The position numbers and the translations under genes are program-made. The notes beneath the pieces are model-generated. The model saw only the letters and a program-made list of their open reading frames with translations, made no database searches and had not been told where the DNA came from. From positions 17,608,001 through 17,672,000 of the forward strand of contig CM119384.1 in the NCBI GenBank assembly GCA_051294905.1: a stretch of 64,000 nt of DNA, given 5' to 3'. The DNA is from Botryllus schlosseri. Lineage: Eukaryota. Below are positions 26,301 through 51,433 of the stretch, piece by piece. Position 1 is the stretch's first letter; the number at the start of each line of letters is the position of its first letter.

Positions 26301-29300
26301 CATCTGATATAGAAATATCTGGAAATTCAATTACAGAAGACCCAACATTGTCAGTTAAAGATACATTTTCAGAGTTGGAAACTAGTGGTGAATTCACTTC
26401 AATTACGGAATTAAATTTAATTGAAAGTACAGAAAAGTCAACAATGCAAGACATATCTTTTGGCATCATAACCACAAATAGTGTAATATCTGACATTCCA
26501 ATTTCATCTACACGAGACATATCTACAACTCAAACCAAATTTGAGACTTTGGAAATTTCTTTGAAGAACCGTTCAACGCCGATAGAACAATATGAAGCAG
26601 TTGGCACATCGATCTTTCCTATATCACAGGCACTATCAACTTCATTGGATTCAAATCAAACTGAAATCAAAGAGCGAATGTATGACTCGACAAACATTAT
26701 TGAACCACTTTTCGAAGAGACTACCACTATACTAGATTACTCGAGTGAAGGATTAGTTTCTGTAAAATATAACATCACTGACGACATATCATCTGGAACA
26801 ACTGCCATTACCTTACAAAACATCTCATTCGATGACGAATTATCGGGCAGTGGATTGTTTGAATTCAGTTCTACAAATAAACAAAGCACGTCATTTGATC
26901 AAAAAATAAAGTTCATCCGGGAGAATGCAAGAATGCCATTGTCACAAGAATTTCGCTTGACATCGACGGATTCTCAATCACTCTCTACAATGAAAACCGT
27001 TTTCGATAAATCTGAGACACCATCAACCTCTGAATATTCAGTTCAGGCTTCCATCAATCCAGTATTGTATACATCGATTTTTGAAACAGATGCTCACTTG
27101 ACTAATACTGCTGTTATGCTCAAAGCATTAGAATATGATATGTCATCCACTCTATATGATTATGCACAATCACGTATTTCAACTGATATAGAAATATCTG
27201 GAAACGCAAGTGTCGAAGTCACAAAGTTGCCAGTTGAAGATACAACTTCAACTTCAGAGGGTGAACGTAGTGGTGAATTTACTTCGAATACTGTAGCAAA
27301 TTTAAATCCAAGCACTGAAGAACCAACAATGCCAGACATATCTTCTGGTAATACTACCAGTGAAAGTCGAATATCTGACAAAACAACTTCATTTACAAGT
27401 CAAATCGAATTAGAGACTTCACACATTTCTTTGAAGAACCATTCAACCCCAGTAGAAACATCTGAAGCATATCCGAAATTCAGCCAAACTGTTTCAGGTG
27501 GCTCGTCGTTCTTTACTGCATCACAGGCATCATCAACTTTATGGGATTCAGATCAAACTGAATTGAAAGAAGAATTACCTGAATCAACAAACGTCGTTGA
27601 ACTACTTTCTGAAGACACTACCATTGTAACCACCGCCATAAGTGAGGGATCAGGTTTCACGATATATAACATCACTGACGACATATCATCTCGCACAACT
27701 GACATTGCATTACGGAATATTTCATACGATGACGAATTATCGGGCAGTGGATTGTTTGAATTCACTTCTAAAAATAAACAAAGCACGTCATTCGATCAAA
27801 CAATGAAAGTCATCCAGGAGAATGCAACAATGCCATTGTCACAAGAATCTAGCGTGAAATCGACAGATTCTCAAACACTAACTACAATGAAAACAGTTTT
27901 CGATGGATTTGAGTCACCATCGATCTCCGAATATTCAATGCAGGCTTCCATCGATCCCGTTTATTTTACATCATTTCTCGAAACAGATGCTCACTTCACT
28001 AATACTGCTGTTACACTCATATATGATGATAACGCACCATCAAGTATTTCTACCGAGATAGAAATATCTGGAAACGCAAGTATCGAAGTCATAAAGGGGC
28101 CAGTTGAAGATACAACTTCAACTTCAGATAGTGAAAGTAGTGGTGAATTTACTTCGAATACTGTGACAAATTTAATTCCAAGCACTGAAGAACCAACAAT
28201 GCCAGACATATCTTCTGGTAATACATCCAGTGAAAGTCGAATATCTGATAAAACAACTTCATCTACAAGTCTATTCGAATTAGAGACTTCACACATTTCT
28301 TTGAAGAACCATTCAACGCCAATAGAAACATCTGGAGCATATGCGAAATTCAGCCGAACTGTTCCAGTTGGCTCGCCGTTCTTTCCTGCATCACAGGCAT
28401 CATCAACTTTATGGGATTCAGATCAAACTGAAATGAAAGAAGAATTACCTGAATCAACAAACGTCACTGAACCACTTTCCGAAGACGTTACCACTGTATC
28501 AGATGCCAGAAGTGAAGGATCAGGTTTTACGATACATAACATCACTGAGGACATATCATCTGGAACAACTGCCATTGCTTTACAAAATATATTATTCGAT
28601 GATGAATTATCGGGCAGTGGGTTGCTTGAATTCAGTTATACAAACAAACAAATCGCGCTATTCGATAAAACAATGAAAGTCATCCAGGAGAATGCAACAA
28701 TGCCGTTTTCACAAGAATTTATCATGAAATCGACAGATTCTCAAACACTCTCTACAATGAAAACCGCTTTCGATAAATTTGAGACACCATCCACCTCTGA
28801 ATATCCAGTTCAGATTTCCACCAATGCTGTATTTTCTTCAACATTTTTTGAAACAGACCCTCACTTGACTGAAACTGCTGTTACACTCAAAACATCGGAA
28901 TATGATGTGTCATCCACTCGATATGATTATACACCATCAAGTATTTCAACCGATTCAGAAATATCTGGAAACGCAAGTATCGAAGTCACAAAGGTGCCTG
29001 TTGAAGGTACAACTTCAACTTCAGAGGGTGAAAGTAGTGGTGAATTTACTTCGAATACTGTGGCAAATTTAATTCCAAGCACTGAAGAACCAACAATGCC
29101 AGACATATCTCCTGGTAATACAACCAGGAAAAGTCGAATATCTGACAAAACAATTTCATCTACAAGTCAAATCGAATTAGAGACTTCACACATTTCTTTG
29201 AAGAACCATTCAACGCCAGTAGAAACATCTGAAGCATATGCGAAATTCAGCCGAACTGTTTCAGTTGGCTCGTCGTCTTTTCCTGCATCACATGCATCAT

Positions 29301-32300
29301 CAACTTCATGGGATTCAGATCAAACTGAAATGAAAGAAGAATTCCCTGAATCCACAAACGTCACTGAACCACTTTCCGAAGACACTACCAATGTATCAGA
29401 TGCCACAAGTGAAGGATCAGGTTTTGCGATACATAACATCACTGAGGACATATCATCTAGAACAACTGCCATTGCTTTACAAAATATATCATTCGATGAT
29501 GAATTATCGGGCAGTGGGTTGCTTGAATTCAGTTCTACAAACAAACAAGTCGCGCCATTCGATAAAACAATGAAAGTCATCCAGGAGAATGCAACAATGC
29601 CATTTTCACAAGAATTTATCATGAAATCGGCAGATTCTCAAACACTCTCTACAATAAAAACCGTTTTCGATAAATTAGAGACACCATCCACCTCTGAATA
29701 TTTAGTTCAGGCTTCCACCAATGTAGTATTTTCTTCAACATTTTTTGAAACATACCCCCACTTGACTGAAACTGCTGTTACACTCAAAACATCGGAATAT
29801 GATGTGTCATCCACTCCATATGATTATACACCATCAAGTATTTCAACCGATTCAGAAATATCTGGAAACGCAAGTATCGAAGCCACAAAGGTGCCAGTTG
29901 AAGGTACAACTTCCACTTCAGATAGTGAAAGTAGTGGTGAATTTACTTCGAATACTGTGGCAAATTTAATTCCAAGCACTGAAGAACCAACAATGCCAGG
30001 CATATCCCCTGGTAATACAACCAGGAAAAGTCGAATATCTGACAAAACAATTTCATATACAAGTCCAATCGAATTAGAGACTTCACACATTTCTTTGAAG
30101 AACCATTCAACGCCAGTAGAAACATCTGAAGCATATGTGAAATTCAGCCGAACTGTTTCAGTTGGCTCGGCGTCTTTTCCTGCATCACAGGCATCATCAA
30201 CTTTATGGGATTCAGATCAAACTGAAATGAAAGAAGAATTCCCTGAATCAACAAACGTCACTGAACCACTTTCCGAAGACACTACAACGGTATCAGATGC
30301 CACAAGTGAAGGACCAGGTTTTACGATACATAACATCACTGAGGACATATCATCTGGAACAACTGCCATTGCTTCACAAAATATATCATTCGATGATGAA
30401 TTATCGGGCAGTGGGTTGCTTGAATTCAGTTCTACAAACAAACAAGTCGCGCCATTCGATAAAACAATGAAAGTCATCCAGGAGAATGCAACAATGCCAT
30501 TGTCACAAGAATTTAGCGTGAAATCGACAGATTCTCAAACACTCTCTACAATGAAAACAATTTTCGATAGATTTGAGTCACCATCGATCTCCGAATATTC
30601 AATGCAGGCTTCCATCAATCCAATTTATTTTACATCATTTCTCGAAACAGATGCTCACTTCACTAATACTGCCGTTACACTCATATATGATAATAACGCA
30701 CCATCAAGTATTTCAACCGAGATAGAAATATCGGGAAACGCAAGTATCGAAGTCATAAAGGGGCCAGTTGAAGATACAACTTCAACTTCAGATAGTGAAA
30801 GTAGTGGTGAATTTACTTCGAATACTGTGGCAAATTTAATTCCAAGCACTGAAGAACCAGCAATGCCAGACATATCTTATGGTAATACAACCAGTGAAAG
30901 TCGAATATCTGACAAAACAATTTCATCTACAAGTCAAATCGAATTAGACACTTCACACATTTCTTTGAAGAACAATTCAATGTCAGTAGAAACATCTGAA
31001 GCATATGCGAAATTCAGCCCAACTGTTCCAGTTGGCTCGTCGTCTTTTTCTGCATCACAGGCATCATCAACTTTATGGGATTCAGATCAAACTGAAATGA
31101 AAGAAGAATTCCCTGAATCAACAAACGTCACTGAACCACTTTCCGAAGACATTACCACTGTATCAGATGCCAGAAGTGAAGGATCAGGTTTTACGATACA
31201 TAACATCACTGAGGACATATCATCTGGAACAACTGCCATTGCTTTACAAAATATATTATTCGATGATGAATTATCGGGCAGTGGGTTGCTTGAATTCAGT
31301 TATACAAACAAACAAATCGCGCCATTCGATAAAACAATGAAAGTCATCCAGGAGAATGCAACAATGCCATTTTCACAAGAATTTATCATGAAATCGACAG
31401 AATCTCAAACACTCTCTACAATGAAAACCGCTTTCGATAAATTTGAGACACCATCCACCTCTGAATATCCAGTTCAGATTTCCACCAATGCTGTATTTTC
31501 TTCAACATTTTTTGAAACAGACCCTCACTTGACTGAAACTGCTGTTACACTCAAAACATCGGAATATGATGTGTCATCCACTCGATATGATTATACACCA
31601 TCAAGTATTTCAACCGATTCAGAAATATCTGGAAACGCAAGTATCGAAGTCACAAAGGTGCCTGTTGAAGGTACAACTTCAACTTCAGAGGGTGAAAGTA
31701 GTGGTGAATTTACTTCGAATACTGTGGCAAATTTAATTCCAAGCACTGAAGAACCAACAATGCCAGACATATCTCCTGGTAATACAACCAGGAAAAGTCG
31801 AATATCTGACAAAACAATTTCATCTACAAGTCAAATCGAATTAGAGACTTCACACATTTCTTTGAAGAACCATTCAACGCCAGTAGAAACATCTGAAGCA
31901 TATGCGAAATTCAGCCGAACTGTTTCAGTTGGCTCGTCGCCTTTTCCTGCATCACAGGCATCATCAACTTTATGGGATTCAGATCAAACTGAAATGAAAG
32001 AAGAATTCCCTGAATCAACAAACGTCACTGAACCACTTTTCGAAGACACTACCACTGTATCAGATGCCACAAGTGAAGGATCAGGTTTTACGATACATAA
32101 CATCACTGAGGACATATCATCTGGAACAACTGCCATTGCTTTACAAAATATATCATTCGATGATGAATTATCGGGCAGTGGGTTGCTTGAATTCAGTTCT
32201 ACAAACAAACAAGTCGCGCCATTCGATAAAACAATGAAAGTCATCCAGGAGAATGCAACAATGCCATTGTCACAAGAATTTAGCGTGAAATCGACAGATT

Positions 32301-35300
32301 CTCAAACACTCTCTACAATGAAAACAGTTTTCGATAGATTTGAGTCACCATCGATCTCCGAATATTCAATGCAGGCTTCCATCAATCCAATTTATTTTAC
32401 ATCATTTCTCGAAACAGATGCTCACTTCACTAATACTGCTGTTATACTCATATATGATGATAACGCACCATCAAGTATTTCAACCGAGATAGAAATATCT
32501 GGAAACGCAAGTATCGAAGTCACAAAGGTGCCAGTGGAAGGTACAACTTCCACTTCAGATAGTGAAAGTAGTGGTGAATTTACTTCGAATACTGTGGCAA
32601 ATTTAATTCCAAGCACTGAAGAACCAACAATGCCAGGCATATCTCCTGGTAATACAACCTGGAAAAGTCTAATATCTGACAAAACAATTTCATCTACAAG
32701 TCAAATCGAATTAGAGACTTCACACATTTCTTTGAAGAACCATTCAACGCCAGTAGAAACATCTGAAGCATATGCGAAATTCAGCCGAACTGTTTCAGTT
32801 GGCTCGTCGCCTTTTCCTGCATCACAGGCATCATCAACTTTATGGGATTCAGATCAAACTGAAATGAAAGAAGAATTCCCTGAATCAACAAACGTCACTG
32901 AACCACTTTTCGAAGACACTACCACTGTATCAGATGCCACAAGTGAAGGATCAGGTTTTACGATACATAACATCACTGAGGACATATCATCTGGAACAAC
33001 TGCCATTGCTTTACAAAATATATCATTCGATGATGAATTATCGGGCAGTGGGTTGCTTGAATTCAGTTCTACAAACAAACAAGTCGCGCCATTCTATAAA
33101 ACAATGAAAGTCATCCAGGAGAATGCAACAAAGCCATTTTCACAAGAATTTATCATGAAATCGACAGATTCTCAAACACTCTCTACAATGAAAACCGTTT
33201 TCGATAAATTTGAGACACCATCCACCTCTGAATATTCAGGTCAGGCTTCCACCAATGTAGTATTTTCTTCAACATTTTTTGAAACATACCCTCACTTGAC
33301 TGAAACTGCTGTTACACTCAAAACATCGGAATATGATGTGTCATCCACTCCCTATGATTATACACCATCAAGTATTTCAACCGATTCAGAAATATCTGGA
33401 AACGCAAGTATCGAAGTCACAAAGGTGCCAGTTGAAGGTACAACTTCCACTTCAGATAGTGAAAGTAGTGGTGAAGTTACTTCGAATACTGTGGCAAATT
33501 TAATTCCAAGCACTCAAGAACCAACAATGTCAGGCATATCTCCTGGTAATACAACCAGGAAACGTCGAATATCTGACAAAACAATTTCATCTACAAGTCA
33601 AATCGAATTAGAGACTTCACACATTTCTTTGAAGAACCATTCAATGCCAGTAGAAACATCTGAAGCATATCCGAAATTCAGCCAAACTATTCCAGGTAGC
33701 TCGTCGTTCTTTACTGCTTCACAAGCATCATCAACTTTATGGGATTCTGATCAAACTGAAATCAAAGAAGAATTACCTGAATCAACAAGCGTCGTTGAAC
33801 TACTTTCTGATGACACTACCATTGTAACCACTGCCATAAGTGAAGGATCAGGTTTCACGATATATAACATCACTGACGACATATCATCTCCCACAACAGA
33901 CATTGCATTGCGAAATATCTCATTCGATGATGAATTATCGGGCATTGGATTGTTTGAATTCACTTCTACAAATAAACAAAGCACGTCATTTGATCAAACA
34001 ATGAAAGTCATCCAGGAGAATGCAACAATGCCATTGTCACAAGAATTTAGCGTGAAATCGACAGATTCTCAAACACTCTCTACAATGAAAACCGCTTTCG
34101 ATAGATTTGAGTCACCATCAACCTCTGAATATTCAATGCAGGCCTCCATTAATCCAGTATTTTTTACATCATTTCTCGAAACAGATGCTCACTTCACTGA
34201 TACTGCTGTTACACTCAGATATGATGATGATGTACCATCAAGTATTTCAACCGAGATAGAAATATCTGGAAACGCAAGTATCGAAGTCACAAAGGTCCCA
34301 GTTGAAGATACAACTTCAACTTCAGATAGTGAAAGTAGTGGTGAATTTACTTCGAATACTGTGGCAAATTTAATTCCAAGCACTGAAGAACCAACAATGC
34401 CAGACATATCTTCTGGTAATACAACCAGTAAAAGTCGAATATCTGACAAAACAATTTCATCTACAAGTCAAATGGAATTAGAGACTGCACACATTTCTTT
34501 GAAGAGCCATTCAACCCCAGTAGAAACATCTGAAGCATATCCGGAATTCAGCCGAACTGTTTCAGGTGGCTCGTCGTTCTTTACTGCATCACAGGCATCA
34601 TCAACTTTATGGGATTCAGATCAAACTGAATTGAAAGAAGAATTACCTGAATCAACAAACGTCGTTGAACTACTTTCTGAAGACACTACCATTGTAACCA
34701 CCGCCATAAGTGAGGGATCAGGTTTCACGATATATAACATCACTGACGACATATCATCTCGCACAACTGACATTGCATTTCGGAATATTTCATACGATGA
34801 CGAATTATCGGGCAGTGGATTGTTTGAATTCAGTTCTACAAATAAACAAAGCACGTCATTCGATCAAACAATGAAAGTCATCCAGGAGAATGCAACAATG
34901 CCATTGTCACAAGAATTTAGCGTGAAATCGACAGATTCTCAAACACTCTCTACGATGAAAACCGTTTTCGATGGATTTCAGTCACCATCAACCTCTGAAT
35001 ATTCAATGCAGGTTTCTATCAATCCAGTATTTTTTACATCATTTCTCGAAACAGATGCTCACTTCACTGATACTGCTGTTACACTCAGATATGATGATAA
35101 TGCACCATCAAGTATTTCAACCGAGATAGAAATATCTGGAAACGCAAGTATCGAAGTCACAAAGGTGCCAGTTGAAGATACAACTTCAACTTCAGATAGT
35201 GAAAGTAGTGGTGAATTTACTTCGAATACTGTGGCAAATTTAATTCAAAGCACTGAACAACCAACAATGCCAGACATATCTTCTAGTAATACAACCAGTA

Positions 35301-38300
35301 AAAGTCGAATATCTGACAAAACAATTTCATCCACAAGTCAAATCGAATTAGAGACTTCACACATTTCTTTGAAGAACCATTCAACGCCAGTAGAAACATC
35401 TGAAGCATATGCGAAATTCAGCCGAACTGATCCAGTTGGCTCGTCGTCCTTTCCTGCATCACAGGCATCATCAACAATATGGGATTCAGATCAAACTGAA
35501 ATGAAAGAAGAATTACCTGAATCAACAAACGTCATTGAACCACTTTCCGAAGACACTGCCACTCTACCCGCTGTCATAAGTGAAGGATCAGGTTTTACGA
35601 TATATAACATCACTGACGACTTATCATCTGGAACAGCTGTCATTGCATTACAAAACGTATCATTCGATGATGAATTATCGGGCAGTGGATTGTTGGAATT
35701 CAGTTCTACAATTAAACAAAGCACGACATTCGATCAAACAATGAAAGTCATCCGGGAGAATGCAACAATGCCATTGTCACAAGAATTTAGCGTGATTTCG
35801 ACAGATTCTCAAACACTCCCTACAATGAAAACCGTTTTTGATAAATTTGAGAAACCATCCGCTTCTGAATATTCAGTTCAGGCTTCCACCAATCTAGCAT
35901 TGTTTACGTCGGTTTTTGCAACAGATGATCATTTGACTGATATTGATGCTATACTCAAAACATCGGAATATGATATGACATCTATTCGATATGATAGTGC
36001 ACTATCAAGTATTTCAAATGATGCAGAAATATCTGCAAACGCGACTACAGAAGTTTCAACATTGTCAGTTGAAGATACAACTTCCGAGTTGGAAATTAGT
36101 GGTGAATTTACTTCAACTACAGAGGTAAATTTTATCGAAAGCACTGAACAAGCAACAACGCGAGACATATCTTTTGGCAGTATTACGACTACTAGTGTCA
36201 TATCTGAAGTAGAAATTTCATCTACACCATATATATCTACAACTCAAACCGAATTTGAGACTTCACAAATTAATTTGAACCATTCAACACCCATTGAAGC
36301 ATCTCCATATCCGGAATTCCGCCAAACTCTTCCAGTTGGCTCGTCGTTCTTTCCTGCATCACAGGCATCATCAACTTCATGGGATTCAGATCAAACTGAA
36401 ATGAAAGAAGAATTACCTGAATCAACAAGGTCCGTTGAACCACTTTTCGAAGACATTACCACTGTACCACATGCCATAAGTGAGGGATCAGGTTTAACGA
36501 TATATAACATCACTGACGACATATCATCTGGAACAACTGCGATTGCATTACAAAATATATCATACGATGATGAATTAGCGGGCAGTGGATTATTTGAATT
36601 CGGTTCTACAAATATGCAAAGCTCGTCATTTGATCAAACAATGGCAGTCATCCAGGAGAATGCAACACGGCCATCGACAGATTCCCAAACCTATAGTGTG
36701 AAAACTGTCATTGATGAAGTTCATCCATCACCGACCTTTGAATATTCTGCTAACGCTTCCACCAATCCAGTATTCCCTACGTGGGATTTTGCAACAGATG
36801 CTCACTTGACTGATACTATTGCTATCCTGAAGAGATCAGAATATGATATGACATTCACTCCATATGATAGTGCGCTATCAAATATTTCAACCGATATAGA
36901 AATATCAGGAAACGCAATCATCAAAGTTAAAAATCTTTCAGCTGAAAATACTACTTCAGAGTTGGTAACTGGTGGTAAATTCAGTTCAAATTCAGAAGCA
37001 AACTTAATTCCAAGCACCGAGCAACTAACAATGCAGGACATATCTTTTGGCACTATAACCACTAAAAGTGTATTATCGGACATAGCAATTCCATCTACAC
37101 GCATTATATCCTCAAGTCAGACCGAATTGGAGACTTCACAATTTTTCTCGAAGAACCATTCAACACTGGTAGAATCATCTGAAGGATCTGCCTATCCATA
37201 TTTTGATCAAACTCTTCCAGCTGGCACATCAATCCTTCAAGTATCACTGGCATCATCATCTTCACAGGATTCAAATCAGACTGAAATCAGAGAACAATTA
37301 TCTGAATTAACAAACATTATTGAACATCTTTTCAAAGACACTACGACCCTACTAGATAACACAACTGAAGGATCAATTTCTACAATACGCAACATGATAG
37401 AAGTCATGTTATCTGAAACAACAGCAGTGGCATTACAAAATATATCATATGATGATGGAATATCAGGTAGTGGTTTTTCTGACTTCACCATAATGACTGG
37501 ACAAGGTACATCATTCGGCCAAACGCCGAGTGTATCCTGGCAGAATACAACATTGTCGATACCAGAAGAAGTTGACATGAAATCGGTACAATCTCACACA
37601 CCTGCTATGAAAGAAGTATTTGAAACATCATCAATGTCTGAATATTCTGCACCTGCATCCACCAGTCGACGCTTTTATCAATCAATTTCTGGAGTAGATC
37701 TTGGCGTGGCGGATAACACTACGCTTGATGGTGTGCTTGAAGGTGTATCGGCCGATATGGAAATATCTGGACACACAAGTACTGAAGTTATAAAGTTGTC
37801 AGTTGAAGAAGCAACTTTAGAGTTGAAAGCCACAAGCGCATCTACTTCAAATACAGTACTCAATGTATTTCAAAGAAGCACTGAACAGCCAAAAATGCAA
37901 GACGTATTTAGTGGTGACATAATCACAACAAGTTTCACGTCTAACGTAACGACTTCTTTTACACCAAACAAATCGCCTAGTCAAAGCGATGCAAAGTCTT
38001 CACAGATTTCGTCAAATATCTATTCAACGCCAGCAGAGCCATCTGAAAAATTCACAAAACCAGAATTTATTAAAACCTCACTGGTCACAACAACCTACTT
38101 TCAAGATTCTCAAGCCTCATCAACATCACAAGATTCAACTCAATCTAAAATCACAGAAGAAATATTTGAATTGATAAACACTATTGATCCACTTGTTGAA
38201 GACACCACCATCGTATTGGATATCACAAGTGAAGGAAGATTTTCTACGATAAATAACATGACCGAAGGCATGTTTTCTGGAACAAGAACAGTCTCATTTC

Positions 38301-41300
38301 AAAATATATCACATGATGATGAAGTATCAGGTAGTGGCTTATCTGACTTCGCGACTATAAACGAATCAAGTACATCATTCAGTGAAATTTGGAATGTATC
38401 CCTGCAAAATACAACACTACCAATATCAGATGAAATTTACGTAAAATCTACAGAATCTCGAACGTTTGAAAACTCATCTACTTCGCCGTCTACCAGTACA
38501 CAGTCATTTGCGTCAATTTCTGCAACAAAAGCTCATTTTACGGATACCCCTGTTTTATCGAAATCATCGGAAATCAATATGACATACACTACAGTCGCTA
38601 GTGCGGTACCGAGAATATCAATAGATATGGAAATATCTGGAGATGGCTTACCAGATGTTACGGTACTTTCAGTTGAGAAAACAGTATCAGAGTTGGCAAC
38701 TAATAGTAGATCTACGTTAAATAAAGAGTTGAGTTTACTTGAAAGTACTACTGAACAGCCAACAATACATAACATAACCGCAGTAGGTGTACTATCTGAC
38801 ATAGCAACTTCATATACACCAGAAAAATCTTCCTTTGAAACTGATGTCACGACTTCTGAAATTTCATTAAAGAACAATTCCATGCTATTGGAACCATCAG
38901 ATGCATCCATGAAACCGGAATTTAGTCATATATCTCCGGTTAGCACATCAATTTTTCAAGGTTCTTGGTTGTCATCATCATCACATGATGTGACTCAAAC
39001 TAATATCCAAGTAGAATTATCAGAATCAACGAAAATTATGGAGCCAACTGTACTAAAAACTTCTGTGGAAATAGAAACCTCTAATGAAAGACCACTTTCT
39101 ACGATGCAGAACGTGAGCGAATATATGTCATCTGGGACAACAGATGTTGCATTACAAAATATATCATTCGATGATGAATTATCGGGCAGAGGATTGTCAG
39201 ACTTCGTCGTAATATCGTTGCAGAATTCAACACGGCCAATGACAGATGGGTTTAGCATGGAATCAACAAAAATATACTCACTTTCTACTATGAATACCAA
39301 ATATGAAGACTTTCTGATATCATCGCTTGCTGAATATTCTACTAAGGTGTCGTCCAGTTCTCTGCTGCTTGAGTCGACTTCTGCTACAGATGACACTTCA
39401 ACCGATAATGCTGTTACACTCAATGTATCAGACAAGGAAATCACTGGTGTCACTTTTCAAAGCACGTTTTCAACCGTATCAGTTGATGAAGAATTATCTG
39501 GTAGTGTTTCTTCTGATAATACTGATAATACTGAGGAAATGATTCAAGACACTACTCCTCAGTTAGAGACAATAATTATATCTACTTCAAACATCAAAGA
39601 CAGCAAATTTGAAAGAAGTTCAATACAAACAACAGTGTCAGAACTAGACAACAAAAGTGCAAGAATCGGACTATCTGAATCCACGCTTCCTTTTATAGCC
39701 AACATATCGCATAATCCGCCCAGCAACAATTCAGGATCTCAGTCATCGTTGATATCACAAGATATAACTCAATCTACAATCACCGGTGAATTAATCGAAA
39801 ATGGTACTGACGAATTAGTGAAAAGCTCTACCACTGATACAGTATTGGTTTATCAAATGCAAAATACCACAAAAGACTTCCTTCTTGAACCAGCAATAGC
39901 GACACCGCAAGATCTCTCTTTCGATGATGAATTATCGGGAAGTGGATTTATCAAAATGACTGCTATAGATGAGCTCAATGTAACTTTCACTCAAACGGTT
40001 TCAAGTGAATTCTCAACATTCCTACCATCCATGACACAGTACACGGAAAGGCAATCAAATCAAACAATCTTTTTTGGAGACGCAATAGTAGAAATATCTC
40101 ACACATCACCATCTTCTATATATCCCACTACTCCGTTATTCAGCTCACGGCCAATACAATCAATTCCTGCAGCATCTAAAGCAATTTTCCTTACCTCACA
40201 AATTTCAATAAAGAATATTTCAGCGCCATTAGCATCATTTGAAACATTTTCTCAGAGTAATATGTATCCACTTGAAACAACGATTTATGAAGAATCTGAA
40301 GCGTCATCAATGCCTCAAGATGTAACGGAAACTTCAATCAAAGAAGAATCCTCTGAATCTACCGAAGATATTGAGACTTTGTCTGAAGAAACGACTTTAA
40401 AAATTGAAACTACAAATACTGCAGATGCTTCCAAAATGATGAACATGACTGAAGATTTTATACCGGCAACTGAAACAACGACTGGTGAATCTAATGTATC
40501 ATTTGAACAAGTCTTCGACTCCACAGCGAAAGTTTCATTGGATAATGTTTCAATGCAATTTGCACCAACTGGAATTTCTCCACAGCCTCACTCTCAAGAC
40601 ATATCAGAAAGTACCACTGAAAAATTTAGGGTGTCTCAAATGACTCCTGCATTAGTACCTTTACCAAGTACAGAATTGTTTGCAACCACAAAAGGTGTTG
40701 AGCCAGGTATGAAACACTCTACTAATGCTAGAGATAGTACTTATGAAGATATAATACCAGAAACCATATTATTTGACGAAATATCATCAGGTTTAGAATC
40801 TGTCGGATGGAGCACTGTACATTTTCTGAATATATCTACTAATGAAACCTCTTTATCCGCACTTCAAACTTCCTTGAAATACTTGCCAACTACATCAGAA
40901 TCTTTCGAGATTTCAAAGATGGATTCGAGTCAAGCGTCAGCATTCACCGAAACAATCCGCAGAACGTCTGAAGCACCATCAACCGCATATATCCTTCCCG
41001 GCAGAACTGTTGGGGACTCATTGGAAGCTACTATGTCATCCAATCGGTCAAAAACTTCAACATCTTTTTTTACCCCATTTCCATTATCGCGGAACACTGA
41101 GATATCCACGGATTTTATTGAGGTTACACATTCTGGTTACGATTCTCCTCACATGTTGAGCGAGAATCCATATCGAAATATTTCGATTGATCAAGCAATT
41201 TCTGGAAGTGGACTTAGTCCTACTAATGCGATTTTGACAGGCACTCCTACGGAGGAAAGTATGAATGCGTCAACTATTAACGAAATTGAACAAAGTACAT

Positions 41301-44300
41301 TGCAACCAACAACTTCTTTACAAAGTGTATATTTCAGTGATGGAACTACGGGAACAGAAGTTATTGAACTGGAAACTGCGTTTGAAGTGAATGTATCTGT
41401 CGATCAAACATTCATGCCAAAATCATTAACCCCATCACAATATTTTTCGAAAAATATAAGTTTTAAAAATTCTGCTTCTATTCCAGTGTATTGGTATACT
41501 AAGGAAGCAATCGAAGGATCTTCAATGCTTCAATATTCAACTCTGTCGTCGGATGATGCAGAATTATTTGCACCTTTATTAACTACTAAAGAGGATAATC
41601 AGAACTCAACAGGGGAAACAGAAACCGAAAAAGTAGAACATTTTCTTTCAACTTACAGTGATATTCAAGGCAACGTAACACAAACAACCGTATCATGGAT
41701 ACAACAAACTTCATTTCAAGACGGATTGATACCTATGTCGTCATCTGAGTCAATAGAAAGTACATATCCCACTGAAATCTCCATTTCAACATCACAAAAT
41801 ATTCCAAAGAGCTCTCCAATTCCATCACAATTGTATCATCCTTATGCCTCATCAAATACCACGTCCAAAACTCGAAGTACTTATTCTTCTGCAGCATTTA
41901 TCACAAGCACCTATGACATGCAGAAATCTCGTGATGTAGCGGTAAATCAGCAACTTTCAACCATGGCACAAACTGAAATAATACCAACAGAGCATAGCAT
42001 ATCAAGTGATGATTTTCAATCTACACTGTCTGTAGAGTCATTACCAGATACTACAACAGATGAAAAAATTTATGGGAGTGGCTTTGCTGAAACGGGATCT
42101 CAAAATGCGTTAGATGCTATTACTGCTTACAGTTTATTTGATGTTAAAGCAAATTCGACTCAAGCGAGTTATATTACGCTGAGTTTTCCAGCTGACGGGG
42201 AAATTTCAGGCAGTGGACTTTTCGAGGCACATGAGAATGCAACCCCAAACATTGTTTCGCCAACAGTAAAACCTTATCAGCAAATGTATCTAGGTGACAG
42301 GAGCACTTTCAGCAGATCGTCTATTTCACCAGCCATATTTACTGCAAAAATACCTTACAGCCATACTATCAGCAAGATGTCACCAACTTCACTGCAGTCG
42401 GAAGGAGGTTCCAGTCAAACAATCCCAACATTCACAACGTCATTTAAGGAATCTGAAATTTCGAGAAACCCTCTAAATTCCACTCAGTACCAATCTACTT
42501 CAGTAATAGTTGATGCTACTTCTGGGAGTCATGCTGTGAATTCTACATTTTTATCTGATATAACTTCCCCCAATATTGAACTATCGAGTCTGGTCCGTAT
42601 TTCGGACATACCTTCAAGTACATCAGCAGTTGTATACCAAACAATTTCTCCGGACGCGATGGAAAATACAACTACAAGGAATGTTTCTTATGCCAATACT
42701 GAAGAGTCAACGCTGAGTACTTCAACAGGGAAGAGCTATACCGGCAGTGACTTTGCTGAAAACACAACAATCATTGCCGAAGACATTTCCTTGGGAGTGC
42801 AGGATTCAACATACAACGATGTTGACGTGACTAAATTGGAAACAACCAAATTAATATCTCAAAACATTTCTTTTACTGATGTCCCTAAATATATTATATA
42901 TTCTGAGGAGCCAGCTGTTAACAAACCAAAAGATTATTTTGATAGTGAGATTGCTTCAACAGCAGATATAACACTTCCATATAGCACGATGACGCGGAAA
43001 GCTATATATTTCCCTGCGAACTTGCATTTGAATCAGACATCCTCATTAAAAACTCTTGGTTCCACAGAAATGTCAACATATATCATCGGATCTCAAGCAA
43101 TTATTAATGCTTCAAAGAGTCAGATTTTTGACAATACTGTGCAGCATTATGACATGACTACTTCAGATATTGAAGTAATTTCAGGCAGTAAGATTGATGT
43201 AGCAACTGTTCCACCAGTGGGAAACACTACCTTCCAAGAAGAAGAAACGACTAAAATTAAATCAATGTTTGCTCGACCTTTTAACACAATTAAGGTCAAC
43301 ATAAATGCTTCGCCAGGGAAAAGTATACCCAATGGTCGTAACAGTACTGAAATGGAAATCAAGACATCCGGAAGTAAAAATGAATACATTAGTCGAATTT
43401 ATACTTCGTCCCTTGGAATTCAATCTGAAATGATGGTACCAAAATCTACAACATTATTTTCGAAACTAACAGGTTCTCCTGGCCTTCGCGATTCTTCAAT
43501 TTCATCAGAATCTCAGTTTCCAACACAGCTATCAATCAGTTCATCCTCGCTTGATTTTTCTGAGACTGGTGACTTTAATGTCTCTTCGCGCATTTTCAGC
43601 AGTACTGGTGACGATCTCATATCTCCAACACTTGCTACCGGCTTGTCTGAAGAAACTCCACCATCAATGAAAGACACCACATCGAGATTCATAAAAAATG
43701 ATGCATCAGCGGCTTCTACGACATACACTGGATTGAAATTCGATAGATCACAGGAAACACCAATGCCTTTGCTAAGTGTATTTTCTAGCTCCAGCAGCAC
43801 ATACGCTGAAGGTGATATTATCGAACCAGCAACCTCTCATAAAGTAGACATATCCATGATTCATACTCCTGTTCAAAAGTCACCGAATGCTTCATTAGCT
43901 TATTTATTATCCTCCGGGCCTTCTTCAATGCCAACGACTTACCAGAATGAAACATTGATGCCTGGTACGGCCGATGACTTAACACCATCCTCCCGCAATT
44001 CTTCGTCAACAGAATCTTTGATTCAAAATCTGCCATATTTTACTAGTGAAAAACCCTCTACATCGATTTATCAATCAATGGATTCACCTCAGTTCCATTT
44101 TTCACCGGAGTCTACCACTAATAACGCTAAGATGACACGGGGAAGCACCATCAATCTGCCAGTGACTCCTGACATTTATATCACTAAAGAGAATAACACA
44201 CGACAGTCAATGATGATTGCTCCGAAAGGTGGATCCCTTGGTAATGTAATTGACGGAATTGATATTTACCAAATAACAACTGTAGATACACCGCGTGCAT

Positions 44301-45371
44301 CTTCCGGTCAAATTACCGTTGAATTGCCCGATACCAGACAAAATTACTCGACATTGTCAGATTATCAAGAAATATCTTCTTATTTCAAGCATCCATCAAC
44401 CACCTCTAAAACACACAAAAATATTTCTGAAATTCCAAGTCAGAGTATATCTTCTATTTTTGAAGATAGCATATCAACGATGGCTAATATACGAGGAACT
44501 AGTTATGCAGCAACCGCTCTTGTTAGAAGTAAGGTTTCTACTAGAAAAATGATCTCCGGCGCATCAGAGGCTTCGACAAACGAAAATGTATTAAATGATG
44601 TATCTTCTGAAGCCGTGGAAATTATCAGTGAAACAGTTTTGCCATCTATATCTGCACTTGGAATTTCCAATCAGCAACAGATTTCAGCTGAAGCATCAAC
44701 GATCATTGAACTGAAGTCTTCGAGTGAAACAGTGCCTGTATCTACGTCAGGATTACGAAGTGATTTTCTTACTAGCACTTTTTCGCCTTACTATTCAACA
44801 GAACCATTTGATGACACAATGTCTTCAGATATTAGTCTGATGCGAAGTTTTTCACCTGTCACTAACAAAGTCATCAAGAATGCTTTAGAATTCAATTATT
44901 CCAGGCCTGTAATAACAGAGCTACCTGATATTTCAGTCGATGAAGACACTACGATTGGTACGATTCCTGGCACGGAGTTCATGTCATCAAATCCAGCAGA
45001 AAAATCTACTGAGCTTGAAACTACTGCTTCAAAACAAACGTTTGCAGGTAGTGCATTGTCCGCTACGGCTGTCAGGGAAGAAATTACAAAAAGTGTCGAT
45101 ATTGAAAGTATGTCCAGCAAAGAAAAGATTGAAATTACAAAGCTGACAAGTACTAGAGTATCTGAAACAGATATATTTGAATCTGCTGCACACATGTCAA
45201 ACAGAATGGATGACAGTTCAATTTCTGTAACAAGCTTACAGTCAGCGTTACCCGTGAAGAGTTTGAAATTGTCGCACTCTCGTTATTCCACCGGAACAAC
45301 CAACATACCAGCACAAGGCGAAGAATCAGAGTCATTAACAACTACATTGCTTCTGTCAAGCACTGAATCAG
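20373..45371 (+). CDS. Giant 24,999-nt exon (8,333 codons): Ser/Thr/Glu/Asp-rich GAG-attachment / mucin-like region
   Basis: ORF 20402..45433 is open throughout. Acceptor ctcttattacag|AT ATA (phase 1) is in frame; candidate donor TCA G|gtatcc at 45372 (phase 1). More than 20 acidic-SGSG-type motifs and no Cys seen on read-through. The 3' boundary is inferred. Confidence 0.85.
23660..39950 (+). repeat. Coding tandem repeat array (about 290-300 aa units; near-identical core about 26830-36570)
   Basis: DDELSGSG-type markers at 26831, 27728, 28598, 29495, 30392, 31262, 32159, 33029, 33926, 34796, 35666 and 36566 (spacing 897/870 nt, last 900). Degenerate flanking units have markers at 23921, 24629, 25334, 26162, 37451, 38315, 39170 and 39923. 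Confidence 0.92.
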
Positions 45372-45385
45372 GTATCCATTTGACC

Positions 45386-46654
45386 CAGTGGTTCTCAAAC
45401 TTTTTGACCTCGCGGCACACTTTCAAAATGTAAAATAGTTCACGGCAAACCAACACACTGGTTCCCAGCTTTTTGTTGGCTTACGGCACCTGAAAACTAC
45501 CAGAATAGTTAGCATGCAGCGCCTTATACAGTCGTACAGAGGTGGTCTCTGACGAAGTACTTCTCTTTTTGCGGAGCATTCAAGTACGATTTGCTATGCT
45601 TCGATGAATAAATTACGGTATCTTCTATATCTGCGGACATGTCACAAATACGTCTACGAATAGCATCATTTAACACGGGAATCGTTTTCAATTCTTCCGC
45701 TGCCTTGGTTCCAAATATTTTTTTTACAATTCTAGTGCAAGCTGGAAGAATAACGTTCTCCGCTTCCGTGTGAGGTGTTGAATTTTTAGCGATTACCTCT
45801 GCCCCCACATAACTAGCCTAATGCGATCTCGTTGAAACTTCGACCTGCACTTCCTATTACATAAGATTTATTCGACAATAAACTCTGCCCACTATACCAC
45901 GCATTGTCGATGTAATTAACCAAAGCGTCGAAGAGACCAAGCACAATCGCCACAGACGAATACACAGGATACAAGGATATTAAAGTCATTTCCACGCGGA
46001 TCGTGTAGCACGCGTGAGGATTGCAATACCTAGTTCTATTGGGTCACCCGCAGTTCAATTATAGTTCCAACAAACCGGGATAATAATCTCAAAGGCGGGG
46101 AAATTTGTAAACTGATATAATTTGATCAACCTTACTTCTCACTTATCAAATTCGTTGCCTGTAACATAACGTTGCTCTCCGCGCCTACATTTTAACGGGA
46201 TAGCCGGCACGTTGTTTAACAATCGCAATGTGGATGGCTATTGTGTTGTCATTCGAATTTTTAAACGTGAACACAAATTCCAAAGCAGTTCATTTCTCGC
46301 AGGTGATCAGGTAGACGATAAGGATTTTAAAACTACATTGTAATAGAGGCGACGCCATGTCTGCTCTCCTCTGCGTTCAGTCAACGAATTGTGCAAAACT
46401 GAATTCAGCCTTCCTGGCACACTATATGTCTGGTAAAGCGAATTCGCGCTAGATGTTGATTGCGGGTATGACAGCAATTGGGATTTGTCAAATGTATAAC
46501 TTCACATCGAGCCCGTTTTTGATTATTGATCGTTTGCTATAGACTAGAATTATTTTGCGCTAAATTTCGAAATTCCGGAAAATTCTCTCGCGTCACCCTT
46601 CCGAGACGTAAATGGCACACTAGTGTGTCGCGGCACACCGTTCGAGAACCATTG
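45386..46654 (-). mobile_element. Defective hAT (Buster/Charlie-type) DNA transposon with transposase remnant
   Basis: TIRs cagtggttctcaaac ... gttcgagaaccattg and 8-bp TSD atttgacc/atttaacc. Minus ORF 45524..45808 (AENVILPACTRIVKKIFGTKAAEELKTIPVLNDAIRRRICDMSADIEDTV) resembles ZBED5/SCAND3/Buster-type transposase sequence. Confidence 0.9.
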
Positions 46655-46957
46655 ATTTAACCTCTTCAATGCAACCTTCCAATTCAATTCTGAGCCAAAC
46701 TTGCAATGGTACTTTTAAAGATTCCAGTCATGATACACAGGAGGGATATTCTATGACTGCTACAATGGATAAATCCACATTTTCCGCATCTGCAATTACT
46801 GGATATGTTACGACCATATATAGCACCTCATTTCAACAACGAACATCCACACCTATATCCAAACGATTTCTGCAATATTCTGTCTTAGATAGTAGCCTTA
46901 CTTCTGATTCAAAGCAGAATACTGCTCCCCGATATGTCCCAGTATAAACCCCTTTAG
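46655..46957 (+). pseudogene. Decayed former coding segment of the giant exon (in-frame S/T-rich sequence with premature TAA at 46945-46947)
   Basis: After removing the element and one TSD the frame reads ...SGIHLT-SSMQPSNSILSQ... continuously. A single TAA separates it from ORF 46990..48468, which is in the same frame. Confidence 0.65.
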
Positions 46958-48424
46958 CTGTAGAAAGCATTCTTTTTACAGATACTACGTTGGCACCTAT
47001 TTTTGAAGCTGAATCTTCAATGGAAAATTTCAGTACTGCTGTGTACAACCCGACAAATGCAACAGGATTGTCGTCCACCAGGGGTTCTGATCTAACTGAG
47101 GCTTCTACAGCAGCTTCTGGATCTATGTCATCGACTATTGTTAGTCGTACATTTTCGCATGATAGAGGTGGTTATCTGTCACCAAATGCCACAGTTCAAC
47201 AAGGAAATATGACTACTGCAAATTCAAATTTAGGATCAAATAAAACATCCGTTATATTACGGAGTGTGTCTACATCCACTTATGTGACACAGAGCCTTTC
47301 ATCAAATCCAGATCCTGCAGCAACCTCAGGGAGCATTTTGATCGGTCCCAAAATGATCAATACATCCCTATCTCCGTCTACGGCACAATCTCCCACACAG
47401 GACAGCAGTTCATATGATGATGCAGGATCTTTGCCATCAAGGAGAATACCTGCAGTAACAAAAACGTCTGAATTACCAGACACGCCCTCGACAACTACCA
47501 GGTTCTCTGATATAGATCATACATATGTACCAGTCACCACCCTTCTACAATTGTACACCATTGCAGCTGCACATGCTGATGATGTTCTGACCTCAACATC
47601 AATTTCACAAGATGTTTCCAGATCTGTTGAATCTACCCATAAACCATCTGAGACAAACACAAGTTCACCTAGAATGACGATCGCTCATTCAAAGTCAATT
47701 TCGCCTACATCCCGTTATGAAGGCACTGAGCTAAGCAATTCAACTGTTCCTCTAACTCAAAAAGGATTATCATACACCTCAACAATTGCTGACGCAGAGA
47801 AAAGATATGGGAAATTTCCATCAGGCACCGACGATTTTGAATCACCATCATACACCGTATCTACTAACAAATTAACATATGAAGTCGTATCCAGTGCTTC
47901 CAATTTGATCCAAACCTCTCTAACATCAATAGTGAACGCAACATCAATACGAAGTTTGCCTACTCTGGTATATTCCATATTGAACAATATTTCAAGTTCC
48001 AGCCATCCTGTCGATACTGCGAACCGGACTGAAGCAGAAATACGGTCTTATTCAACACATAGTTTGCATTTCCCCTCCCAGGGGCCCTTAGTTCACAGAA
48101 CTTCCAGCTCAGTGACTAATCTGTTGCAGAAACAAGATAGAGAAAATGCTACGGAGGAATTGAATGAAACAACTGTAATTTCCTCAGTTTCAATGGTGGA
48201 AGCAAATGTGACTGTGAGTGTACGTAACGTCTCATCAACACCTCTCCCATTTCCTGAGTCAACAGAACCAGGTGTTCCCTATTTTACTAACATGACTGAA
48301 AAGCAGCCTCAGATGCTGCAGACATTGAATATGACAGATTCAAGACAATACATCTCGAATGGGTCACCTCCCACAACCACCAAATCTTCGCCAAGTGCAG
48401 TCTCCGTTACAATGAAAGAGACAT
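46958..48424 (+). CDS. Ser/Thr-rich exon (distal part of the GAG/mucin region)
   Basis: ORF 46990..48468, donor T|gtaagt at 48425 (phase 1). Candidate acceptor cccctttag|CT (phase 1) lies 10 nt after the premature stop. Start coordinate inferred. Confidence 0.7.
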
Positions 48425-48487
48425 GTAAGTATTATCCCACAGCGGTAATTCCTTACCTACTTTTGTAATGTACCTATTCATTTTTAG

Positions 48488-48640
48488 TATATTGCCCAAC
48501 AGAATGGGTAATGTTCCAACATAACTGCTACAAACATTTTACAAAGAAATTGCGGTGGCATGCAGCTGAAGAGAAATGTGCTGAATTTGATTCTAACTTG
48601 GTCAGCATCCACAGTGCATCAGAAAATGACTTTATTTCAG
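48488..48640 (+). CDS. C-type lectin domain 1, exon a
   Basis: YCPTEWVMFQHNCYKHFTKKLRWHAAEEKCAEFDSNLVSIHSASENDFIS; 63-nt intron upstream; phase 1-1. Confidence 0.92.
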
Positions 48641-49752
48641 GTGAAGAACATCATATAAAACTCATTCTTCATGTTGCCTGCATGTGCCAATATTTCTACA
48701 ATGTTTAATATGTATTTGATAGACAAAATGCTGTTGCTGATTATATCTCGCAACAGTTTATACGCCATACAAGAATACACTGCGTAACAGTATTTTTGTT
48801 TAACTCGAATTTCAATGGCCCTTCCTGTTTTCTGGGACGCTAGAGTGAGATAGAGAGCTAAGATGAGATCGACAGCTGTCGCATGTTACATCTCAAGTCC
48901 GGCCCTTATTTTGGCACTCTCTAGACATGCCAATATGCAATCTAGAAATTTTCCACTATTAGGCTGCTTTCACTATCTTATTTGAAATGTGATTACTACC
49001 AAAGAAATATCCACATATACATAAAATAAGTTTTGCTGGAACAAATTGCGACTTACGTATAAAAAAAAAATATAAAAAGTAATTTTGCAATAACAAGGTA
49101 TCACACTCATAAAGATGTGACTCTGGTATAACCTCTAGTAATGTATCAAACCTGCGAACGATAAGCGAAATAGTTTGTAAGCAGATATTTGCTATACTAG
49201 CCAAGTTCCGCAATTCTGATGTAGATTGTCAAAACATCACAGCATTTATGAGTTAAAAGATGAGATATGGTTTTTCTTCACCTATCCAAATATGTATAGA
49301 CTAGACCTTAACCCACAACTTAATTATGGTGCCATATTAACAAATGGAATTTGTGCTTTTCAGTGTGTAGTGCAGTTTGGCACTGCTCCACTCCTCACCC
49401 CACTCCCGCAGCATAATAAAAATATCAAGGCAAATCAAAATTTCATCCGATTTTGTTACATCGTGATATGAGTGATGGTACCAATTTATAGTACCAGTAC
49501 CCCTCGTGATAATTATTGGTCAAAAAAGTTATTTTCTCTTGAAATGAACTCCATTTCATGGCATTAATTGGCTTGATAATTTGACTTAAAATTTGAAAAA
49601 CGTAATTCCAAGGTATCAAATATACCCCTGATAATAAACGATTAGCGACAGAGACATGCTTCACTATGAATACACTCTGAAAGCAAGAAACTTTCATCAG
49701 TCTCCGGTAAAATTATCCAAGTCATTATTGTTACAATTTTTAACCATTCAAG

Positions 49753-49832
49753 GACAAGCAAGAGTATCGCAATGGATTGGATTAAAATCTGAAAGAGGAA
49801 GCACATCTATGTGGTCTGATGGAACAGCTATG
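49753..49832 (+). CDS. C-type lectin domain 1, exon b (WIGL motif)
   Basis: GQARVSQWIGLKSERGSTSMWSDGTAM; donor ATG|gtgagt (phase 0). Confidence 0.9.
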
Positions 49833-51269: not shown

Positions 51270-51374
51270 CATGCGATGCAGAAACATGTCTAAATGGGGG
51301 GAAATGCTCAGAAGTGGAATCAGCGCCCTTGTGTAATTGCGCCGAGGGATTTGATGGAGTCATTTGTGAAATAG
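51270..51374 (+). CDS. EGF-like domain 1
   Basis: ACDAETCLNGGKCSEVESAPLCNCAEGFDGVICEI; 105 nt, phase 1-1. Confidence 0.92.
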
Positions 51375-51433
51375 GTAGAGTTTGTTGAGGGTGTTTTAGA
51401 TTCATTGTAATCAGCTTTCCTGTAAATATTCAG

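What the first reader, a model, noticed from the sequence alone, without database searches (positions are those of the whole stretch)
45372..46957. Transposon landed inside the giant exon and appears rescued by a newly created intron (intronization)
Seen: deleting the hAT element (45386-46654) plus one TSD copy restores a continuous frame ...TCA GGT ATC CAT TTG ACC|TCT TCA ATG CAA CCT.... The reconstructed ancestral exon (20373-48424 minus 1,277 nt = 26,775 nt) is an exact multiple of 3. A phase-1 donor CAG|GTATCC lies 14 nt before the element. A phase-1 acceptor cccctttag|CT lies at 46957, just 10 nt after the only in-frame stop (TAA 46945-47). The segment between element and acceptor is still S/T-rich but carries a stop and a Cys, unlike the flanking exon parts. 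The two TSD copies differ at one base and the transposase is degraded, so the insertion is not recent. Inference: exonic sequence was converted into an intron that removes the element plus 309 nt (103 codons) of former coding DNA, a rare catchable case of intron gain.
Basis: partly seen in the sequence, partly recalled or inferred. Interest (0 to 1): 0.8.

Follow-up and report, generated by a model that had tools for sequence, protein, structure and literature searches.

The report
Old transposon inside giant exon, probably spliced
A 1.27-kb cut-down hAT transposon sits inside the 28-kb coding exon of a giant proteoglycan-like gene and is probably removed with about 0.3 kb of former coding DNA as a new intron, but no splice-junction read was seen.

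Summary
It comprises an 8-bp target-site duplication (TSD), 15-nt terminal inverted repeats (TIRs) and a 1,269-bp element. Deleting the element plus one TSD copy restores one frame with a single stop, TAA at 46945-47.

- **The element:** it is an internally deleted hAT copy, antisense to the gene, from a family with many genomic copies. Its terminal branch in a tree of copies is about 0.04 substitutions per site, so the insertion is not recent.
- **Other samples:** the element's 3' junction is also present in another individual (X5). A low-coverage run labelled as a second organism (X20) probably carries this copy too.
- **New fact:** in X5 the stop codon reads TAT (Tyr), so the stop is polymorphic.
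- **RNA-like evidence:** one run (X8) covers both exon flanks but gives zero depth over 46442-46977. Coverage resumes at about 46979.
- **Gaps:** no junction was displayed, and X8 also has a hole over true exon sequence. A raw RNA run showed no expression, and no orthologue or empty site was found.

Verdict: insertion into coding sequence is solid. Rescue by an intron from donor 45372 is likely (about 0.55) but unproven. The mechanism is a known kind. The scan earlier found a similar hAT-in-exon case elsewhere in this genome that proved to be a segregating allele.

The parts
20373..45371 (+). Upstream part of the giant S/T/E-rich exon. It has 290-299-aa repeats with DDELSGSG motifs and, in the coding frame 20375-45385, no stop and no Cys in 8,337 codons.
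45369..45377 (+). Candidate 5' splice site CAG|GTATCC. The intron starts at 45372, phase 1, 14 nt before the element, in host sequence.
   Evidence: best local donor, 5.0 bits on a rough position weight matrix
45378..45385 (.). 5' copy of the target-site duplication, ATTTGACC.
   Evidence: It differs from the 3' copy at one base, a synonymous TTG/TTA Leu change.
45386..46654 (-). Internally deleted, non-autonomous hAT-family element of 1,269 bp. Its transposase remnant lies on the minus strand, so it is antisense to the host gene.
45386..45400 (.). Terminal inverted repeat, left arm (CAGTGGTTCTCAAAC).
   Evidence: 13/15 complementary with 46640-46654
45524..45808 (-). 94-aa ORF, a remnant of the transposase. 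It is 77% identical to part of a 618-aa ORF in a 3.2-kb relative.
   Evidence: Pfam found nothing for the remnant on its own.
46640..46654 (.). Terminal inverted repeat, right arm.
46655..46662 (.). 3' copy of the target-site duplication, ATTTAACC. It has the central TA seen in the family's other TSDs.
46663..46957 (+). Former coding segment, still S/T-rich and open in the downstream frame except for one stop. It has zero depth in the RNA-like run X8.
46702..46704 (+). TGC, the only Cys codon in about 8,920 codons of the restored exon.
46945..46947 (+). TAA, the only in-frame stop of the restored exon. It is polymorphic: TAT (Tyr) in run X5.
46956..46957 (+). It gives an intron of 1,586 nt.
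46980..46981 (+). Alternative acceptor AG (ttctttttacag|AT), also phase-compatible. It gives an intron of 1,610 nt and fits the start of X8 depth better.
46982..48424 (+). Downstream part of the giant exon. It is open and Cys-free and ends at a GTAAGT donor at 48425.
48488..48650 (+). Next exon, the start of a C-type lectin domain. It is in frame with the downstream part of the giant exon.

Best explanation
An internally deleted hAT element of the Buster/ZBED5-like kind inserted, antisense, into the C-terminal unique part of the giant glycosylation exon. The gene is large and secreted-protein-like: V-set Ig domains, then about 8,900 S/T/E-rich codons, then C-type lectin, EGF, C-type lectin and Sushi domains.

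The insertion shifts the frame by 2 and brings a stop 48 nt into the element. The gene stays productive because the spliceosome removes the element together with flanking former coding sequence. Both keep the frame.

The roughly 100 codons between the element and the acceptor are no longer translated. They have begun to drift, with one Cys codon and one polymorphic stop.

- Shown: the insertion, its family and its age, the frame arithmetic, and its presence in another sample.
- Inferred: the splicing itself and which acceptor is used.
For: - Frame restoration leaves a single stop.
- Family and ends: the family's TSDs are 8 bp with a central TA, perfect in 4 copies (3 non-autonomous copies and the 3.2-kb relative). 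The 3,225-bp relative carries a 618-aa ORF that gives weak DUF4371 and hAT-dimerisation matches and scores 0.98 against ZBED5/FAM200 clusters in the Atlas.
- Age: the terminal branch is 0.039, with the sister copy at 0.047. X5 carries the element-flank junction on a contig that differs from the window at 11 of 776 bases.
- Constraint upstream: if the upstream ORF had been neutral for even d=0.007, the chance of no stop is about 1e-3, and at d=0.039 about 1e-17. So the ORF has been under constraint since the insertion.
- Constraint downstream: the downstream frame joins in phase to an intact C-type lectin exon and to EGF and Sushi exons. The X5 indels downstream total 18 nt and 3 nt, both in frame.
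- Relaxed segment: the only Cys and the only stop both fall in the 94-codon segment. The chance of that by uniform placement is about 1e-4, a post hoc figure.
- RNA-like run X8: its element bins are not inflated, whereas they are 100-2,600 times inflated in the DNA runs, so it behaves like RNA. It covers 44700-45369 and 46978-48049 at depth 8-58 and gives 0 over 46442-46977.
- Donor: 45372 is the best local donor and the only good phase-1 one.
Against: - No joint from 45371 to 46958 or 46982 was displayed. Sixteen joints were hidden, and read laying could be called only once.
- X8 is RNA only by the tool's guess plus my depth argument. It also has zero depth over true exon sequence at 48050-48424.
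- The raw RNA run X23 (6% of it read) had no reads on the exon.
- The donor lacks the usual +4 to +6 consensus (rough matrix).
- The downstream 492 codons staying open is not significant on its own (P 0.12-0.76).
- No orthologue, paralogue or annotated protein exists in any searched database to show an empty site.
Confidence: 0.55

Rival explanations
1. Broken or hypomorphic allele, or a gene on its way to decay. The insertion truncates the protein 16 codons into the element, no productive in-frame splicing occurs, and the downstream part is no longer translated.
For: - No junction read was seen, and the raw RNA run showed no expression.
- The reference haplotype also carries a TAA that another individual lacks.
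- The openness of the downstream 492 codons is not statistically significant.
Against: - The element is present in X5 and probably in X20, and no empty site was seen.
- The terminal branch of 0.039 and the 1.4% divergence of insertion-bearing haplotypes make an intact 8,337-codon ORF very unlikely without selection. A truncated but still useful product could explain that, though.
- The downstream C-type lectin, EGF and Sushi exons are intact and in phase.
- X8 lacks the element's 3' half and the segment but has both flanks.
Confidence: 0.2
2. The element is spliced out, but through other sites that leave all or part of 46663-46957 exonic. One pairing uses cryptic sites at the element's own ends (donor 45388, acceptor 46646, both phase 2). 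Others pair donor 45372 with acceptor 46888 or 46942. In these models the TAT haplotype is the working allele and the reference TAA is a nonsense allele.
For: - In X5 the segment is open from about 46623 to 48424.
- Acceptor 46942 has the best pyrimidine-tract score, and the yUnAy branch-point consensus is matched by eye 32-40 nt upstream of it.
- The segment has no frameshifting indel.
Against: - X8 depth is exactly 0 over 46442-46977, while 46978 onward is at about 30-39.
- The element-end sites score poorly, at 1.7 and -2.7.
- The Cys codon lies in the segment, against none in the other 8,829 codons.
Confidence: 0.1
3. The element landed in a facultative in-frame intron that already existed inside the exon: an exitron of 309 or 333 nt with the same donor and acceptor. 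The insertion was tolerated at once, and splicing then became obligatory. On this reading no new splice sites were created.
For: - Both splice sites lie in host sequence, not in the element.
- The host part removed is a multiple of 3 and was still open and S/T-rich, as exitrons are defined (PMC4484396).
- Giant disordered exons are a plausible home for such events (inference).
Against: - The multiple of 3 is forced by the frame arithmetic and adds no independent support.
- There are no transcript data from an element-free allele or species.
Confidence: 0.15

Closest known systems
Removal of exonic DNA transposons by splicing through cryptic sites (maize Ds and dSpm alleles of waxy, adh1 and bronze; C. 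elegans Tc1). From my own knowledge, not re-read here.
   Same: A cut-and-paste element in a coding exon is removed from the pre-mRNA through non-standard donor and acceptor sites near or in the element. This gives a partly functional, slightly altered protein.
   Different: Those are laboratory or recent mutant alleles, often with sites inside the element ends. Here both sites lie in host exon sequence, about 0.3 kb of coding DNA goes with the element, and the insertion is old (about 4% diverged) and shared between samples.
Intronization of exonic sequence (Irimia et al. 2008; Catania and Lynch 2008, as cited in PMC9860276 and PMC4484396)
   Same: Former coding sequence becomes intronic, and a premature stop or frameshift is the proposed driver.
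   Different: The trigger here would be a transposon rather than a point mutation. It is unproven at the RNA level.
Introner elements (Huff et al. 2016; Gozashti et al. 2022, PMC9860276)
   Same: A non-autonomous DNA transposon with TIRs and TSDs ends up as a spliceosomal intron in a coding exon.
   Different: Introners carry or create their own splice sites through the TSD and populate many genes. Here the element and its TSD supply neither site (the TSD is ATTTRACC), and I did not test whether the family is enriched as introns.
Exitrons (Marquez et al. 2015, PMC4484396)
   Same: An intron lies inside a protein-coding exon with coding-like sequence, and the host part removed is a multiple of 3.
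   Different: With the element inside, retention is no longer coding, so today it would be an obligatory intron.
hAT superfamily, Buster/ZBED5-FAM200-like branch
   Same: 8-bp TSDs with a central TA, short TIRs that begin CAG, and a transposase of about 620 aa resembling ZBED5/FAM200/GTF2IRD2.
   Different: The Pfam matches are below the curated cut-offs, and the copy in the window is a 1.27-kb deletion derivative with no intact ORF.

Membership tests
hAT superfamily DNA transposon | 8-bp target-site duplication | tested here: met
   The window copy matches at 7/8. Other copies are perfect at 8/8: L003, L006 and L009 and the 3.2-kb relative in L028 (CACTAGAG). All have a central TA.
hAT superfamily DNA transposon | Short terminal inverted repeats (about 10-25 bp) | tested here: met
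   15 nt, 13/15 complementary. The family termini read CAGTGGTTCTCAAC ... GTTGAGAACCACTG.
hAT superfamily DNA transposon | Transposase with the hAT C-terminal dimerisation domain and an RNase-H-like catalytic core | tested here: inconclusive
   The 618-aa ORF of the relative gives Dimer_Tnp_hAT at E=0.004 and DUF4371 at E=0.003, both below the curated cut-offs. The Atlas feature search gives 0.98 to ZBED5/FAM200 clusters, which is a lead only. There was no PDB sequence hit. The remnant in the window gives no Pfam hit.
Spliceosomal intron created by transposon insertion plus intronization | The interrupted sequence was one continuous coding exon | tested here: met
   Deleting the element and one TSD copy leaves one frame with a single stop, polymorphic, in 8,925 codons. 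The segment's composition matches the flanks.
Spliceosomal intron created by transposon insertion plus intronization | Spliced junction in mature RNA | tested here: inconclusive
   The RNA-like run X8 has both flanks and zero depth over 46442-46977, but no joint was displayed and X8 has holes elsewhere. The raw RNA run X23 had no reads on the gene.
Spliceosomal intron created by transposon insertion plus intronization | Orthologue or allele without the element has an uninterrupted, unspliced exon | not testable with these tools
   No homologue in 5.8 billion or 1.84 billion protein sets. The locus is single-copy in its own genome. No empty site was seen in X5 or X20.
Introner element | The element or its TSD supplies the splice sites, and the family occupies many introns | tested here: not met
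   The donor lies 14 nt outside the element and the acceptor 303-327 nt outside. The TSD has no splice-site motif. Family-wide intron occupancy was not tested.

The most novel reading that the evidence does not exclude
This is a fixed, fairly young intron gain in a sea-squirt gene, caught midway. A hAT insertion into a 28-kb coding exon forced the use of host cryptic sites. About 100 codons were turned into intron, and they are only now picking up their first disabling changes: one Cys codon and one stop that is still polymorphic. That would give a datable, population-level example of transposon-triggered intronization in a close relative of vertebrates.
Probability: 0.45. Interest if true: 0.6.

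Novelty: new member of a known kind. Interest (0 to 1): 0.45.

Why it matters
Documented intron gains in animals are rare, and their mechanisms are usually inferred long after the event. Here the trigger (element, TSD, TIRs) and the former coding sequence are both still readable, and the first stop is still segregating. If splicing is confirmed, the locus would allow direct tests. One could ask how a coding exon tolerates a transposon, which cryptic sites are recruited, and how fast newly intronic sequence decays. If splicing is not confirmed, it is an ordinary old insertion allele in a very large, fast-evolving gene.

Tried and rejected
- **Protein homologue searches.** I searched to recover an annotated or transcript-derived protein crossing the site. 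The upstream ORF region 7800-8323, the last 250 upstream codons and the 480 downstream codons against 1.84 billion representatives all gave nothing. The gene has no relatives or models in those sets.
- **Own-genome search for a comparator.** A search for a paralogue or alternative haplotig to serve as an empty site found only the locus itself.
- **Self-comparison of the exon.** I looked for a repeat unit covering the insertion site and found none. The 290-299-aa repeats lie further upstream.
- **Pfam on the element's own ORF pieces.** No hit. The family had to be assigned through a longer relative.
- **PDB sequence search with the 618-aa ORF.** No hit.
- **Raw RNA run X23.** No reads on the exon in the 6% of the run that was read, so it is uninformative.
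- **Synonymous against non-synonymous changes.** The displayed variants in the flanks give 12 synonymous, 21 non-synonymous and no stop. This is too few and too weakly constrained to compare with the segment.
- **Rejected: an ordinary old intron that merely received a transposon.** The host part is open in the correct frame and S/T-rich, while the other two frames carry 5 and 8 stops.
- **Rejected: introner-type origin.** The splice sites lie outside the element and the TSD.
- **Not tried: a junction-pattern scan of metagenome contigs.** The chance of finding sea-squirt transcripts there seemed negligible.

Full report
**What is there**

The window holds a very long open frame on the + strand, 20402..45433 (8,343 aa). 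A second open frame, 46990..48468, lies in a different phase.

Between them sits a 1,269-bp element at 45386-46654. Its 15-nt terminal inverted repeats are 13/15 complementary. It is flanked by ATTTGACC at 45378-85 and ATTTAACC at 46655-62.

Removing the element and one flank copy joins the two frames. The stretch 20373-48424 minus 1,277 nt is 26,775 nt, and its coding frame has exactly one stop, the TAA at 46945-47. The other two frames have 406 and 791 stops.

The frame as it stands runs 48 nt into the element and ends at TAA 45431-33.

**The gene**

- Upstream of the giant exon are several split V-set immunoglobulin exons.
- The giant exon is S 18%, T 14% and E 8%. It has 290-299-aa repeats carrying DDELSGSG motifs and 175 N-x-S/T sequons.
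- The exon ends at a GTAAGT donor at 48425. It joins in phase to an exon that starts a C-type lectin domain.
- Further downstream come EGF_CA, two EGF domains, a second C-type lectin domain and three Sushi exons.

This is a giant secreted, proteoglycan- or mucin-like protein whose C-terminal domains need the downstream frame. The 28-kb region has a steady negative GC skew that ends at the exon borders.

**The element**

It belongs to an abundant family: 61 scored matches out of 2,134 first-look candidates in the 495-Mb genome. Full-length copies are 75-82% identical and one partial copy is 91-92% identical.

- A 94-aa ORF on the minus strand (45524-45808) matches at least 150 places in the genome. 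One of these lies inside a 618-aa ORF.
- That ORF sits in a 3,225-bp element (L028:2499-5723) with the same termini and a perfect 8-bp duplication, CACTAGAG. The window copy aligns to both of its ends and to a piece of its ORF. The window copy is therefore an internal-deletion derivative, inserted antisense to the host gene.
- The ORF gives weak matches to DUF4371 and to the hAT dimerisation domain, both below Pfam's cut-offs. It scores 0.98 against ZBED5/FAM200/GTF2IRD2-like clusters in the Atlas.
- Other copies have perfect or near-perfect 8-bp duplications, all with a central TA. From my own knowledge, that is the target pattern of the Buster branch of hAT.

I accept 'hAT' on the TSDs, the TIRs and these leads. 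The domain evidence is weak. Pfam found nothing in the remnant itself, and PDB gave no sequence hit.

**Age and spread**

In a tree of 17 copies the window copy has a terminal branch of 0.039 and its sister copy 0.047. That is an upper bound on divergence since insertion.

Reads were laid once, on four runs.

- **X5:** another sample of the same species, and DNA, since its element bins are up to 2,600 times the flank depth. It has a 776-nt contig running from 33 nt inside the element's 3' end to 47397, with 11 differences and no gaps. The insertion is therefore present there, on a haplotype about 1.4% different.
- **X20:** labelled as a second organism, at depth 2-4. It has contigs inside the element at single-copy depth with 0-3 differences, whereas other genomic copies are at most 92% identical. 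It probably carries this copy too, though no contig bridging a junction was listed.
- **Empty site:** no joint skipping the element was displayed, but 16 joints were hidden.

**The stop is polymorphic**

In X5 position 46947 is T, so the codon is TAT (Tyr). The neighbouring change at 46938 is synonymous. In X5 the downstream frame is open from about 46623 onward.

**Is the gene still under selection?**

About 4.0% of random substitutions in the upstream ORF would create a stop. The chance of no stop in 8,337 codons without selection is about 1e-3 at d=0.007, roughly half the X5-to-reference distance. At d=0.039 it is about 1e-17. The upstream ORF has therefore been constrained since the insertion.

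For the 492 downstream codons the same test has no power (P 0.12-0.76). Three other observations speak for continued translation downstream:

- The domain exons are intact and in phase.
- The X5 indels there sum to 18 nt and 3 nt, both in frame.
- There is no Cys in 8,829 flank codons.

The only Cys codon (46702-04) and the only stop both fall in the 94-codon segment between element and acceptor. Uniform placement would give about 1e-4, a post hoc figure. This is the signature of relaxed constraint on just that segment.

**Splice sites**

On a rough position weight matrix, CAG|GTATCC at 45372 is the best GT within about 190 nt and the only credible phase-1 donor.

The acceptor at 46981 reads ttctttttacag|AT and closely resembles the giant exon's own acceptor, ctcttattacag|AT.

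The two leading models differ by 24 nt. The junction peptide would be ...STES-A-VESILFTDTT... for 46957 or ...STES-D-TTLAPI... for 46981.

**RNA evidence**

- **X23:** a raw RNA run, of which 6% was read. It had no reads on the exon.
- **X8:** the tool only guessed that this is RNA. It behaves like RNA, because its element bins are no higher than its exon bins and the element's 3' end has depth 0, where the DNA runs show 100-700 times the flank depth.
- **X8 coverage:** 44700-45369 is at depth 8-25 and 46978-48049 at 12-58. Depth is exactly 0 over 46442-46977.
- **Where coverage resumes:** from the listed contigs (both start at 47007, summed depth 30.3) and the bin mean of 39.2, coverage must begin at about 46979. 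An exon start at 46982 predicts about 38 in that bin and 0 in the one before. A start at 46958 predicts about 4.5 in the bin before, where 0 was observed. This is my inference from binned depths, not a junction.

Three caveats apply. No X8 joint appeared among the 15 shown. X8 also has zero depth over real exon sequence at 48050-48424. The tool itself warns that holes prove nothing.

**Reading**

- Insertion into continuous coding sequence: about 0.97.
- Productive removal by an intron from 45372 to 46981 or 46957: about 0.55. Within that, 46981 is somewhat favoured.
- Rival, a broken or decaying allele: 0.2.
- Rival, splicing through other sites that keep the segment exonic, which would make the reference TAA a nonsense allele: 0.1.
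- Rival, insertion into a pre-existing exitron: 0.15.

**Comparison with known systems**

Splicing-out of exonic DNA transposons is classical in maize and C. elegans mutants (my own knowledge). Intronization and introners are established ideas (PMC9860276; PMC4484396).

This is not an introner, because the element supplies neither splice site. It would be a new, naturally maintained example of a known mechanism. What is unusual is that the trigger and the intronized coding sequence are both still legible and the first stop is still segregating.

Noticed in passing
window 20373-48424: The giant exon encodes about 8,900 residues with no Cys at all outside the segment under study. It has eleven or so tandem 290-299-aa repeats carrying DDELSGSG (acidic residues plus Ser-Gly, like glycosaminoglycan attachment sites), 21 SGSG motifs and 175 N-x-S/T sequons.
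   Followed up: partly
window 3883-19698 and 48488-62920: The gene architecture is several V-set Ig domains, the giant exon, then C-type lectin, EGF_CA, EGF, EGF, C-type lectin and three Sushi domains. The C-terminal set resembles the G3 region of vertebrate lecticans and the selectins. No sequence homologue of the S/T-rich parts exists in the large protein sets.
   Followed up: partly
L028:2499-5723 (G000:C9:23206893-23210117): An apparently intact 3,225-bp relative of the element, with a perfect 8-bp TSD (CACTAGAG), matching TIRs and an open 618-aa ZBED5/FAM200-like ORF. It is possibly an autonomous source of the family.
   Followed up: partly
window 47007-48040 (run X8): X8 holds two allele classes over the downstream exon part. 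One is nearly identical to the window, and the other differs at about 5.5-8% of bases (12/152, 18/219, 12/218, 13/229). This is very high allelic divergence, or a pooled sample.
   Followed up: no
window 47804-47824 and 48107 (run X5): There are in-frame length polymorphisms in the downstream exon part. Gaps of 1, 11 and 6 nt together remove 18 nt, and there is a 3-nt insertion (CAT).
   Followed up: no
window 45236-45369 (run X5): The DNA run X5 has zero depth just upstream of the element, although both sides are covered. This may be a divergent or rearranged stretch in that individual, or an assembly hole. The 5' junction of the element is therefore unconfirmed in X5.
   Followed up: no
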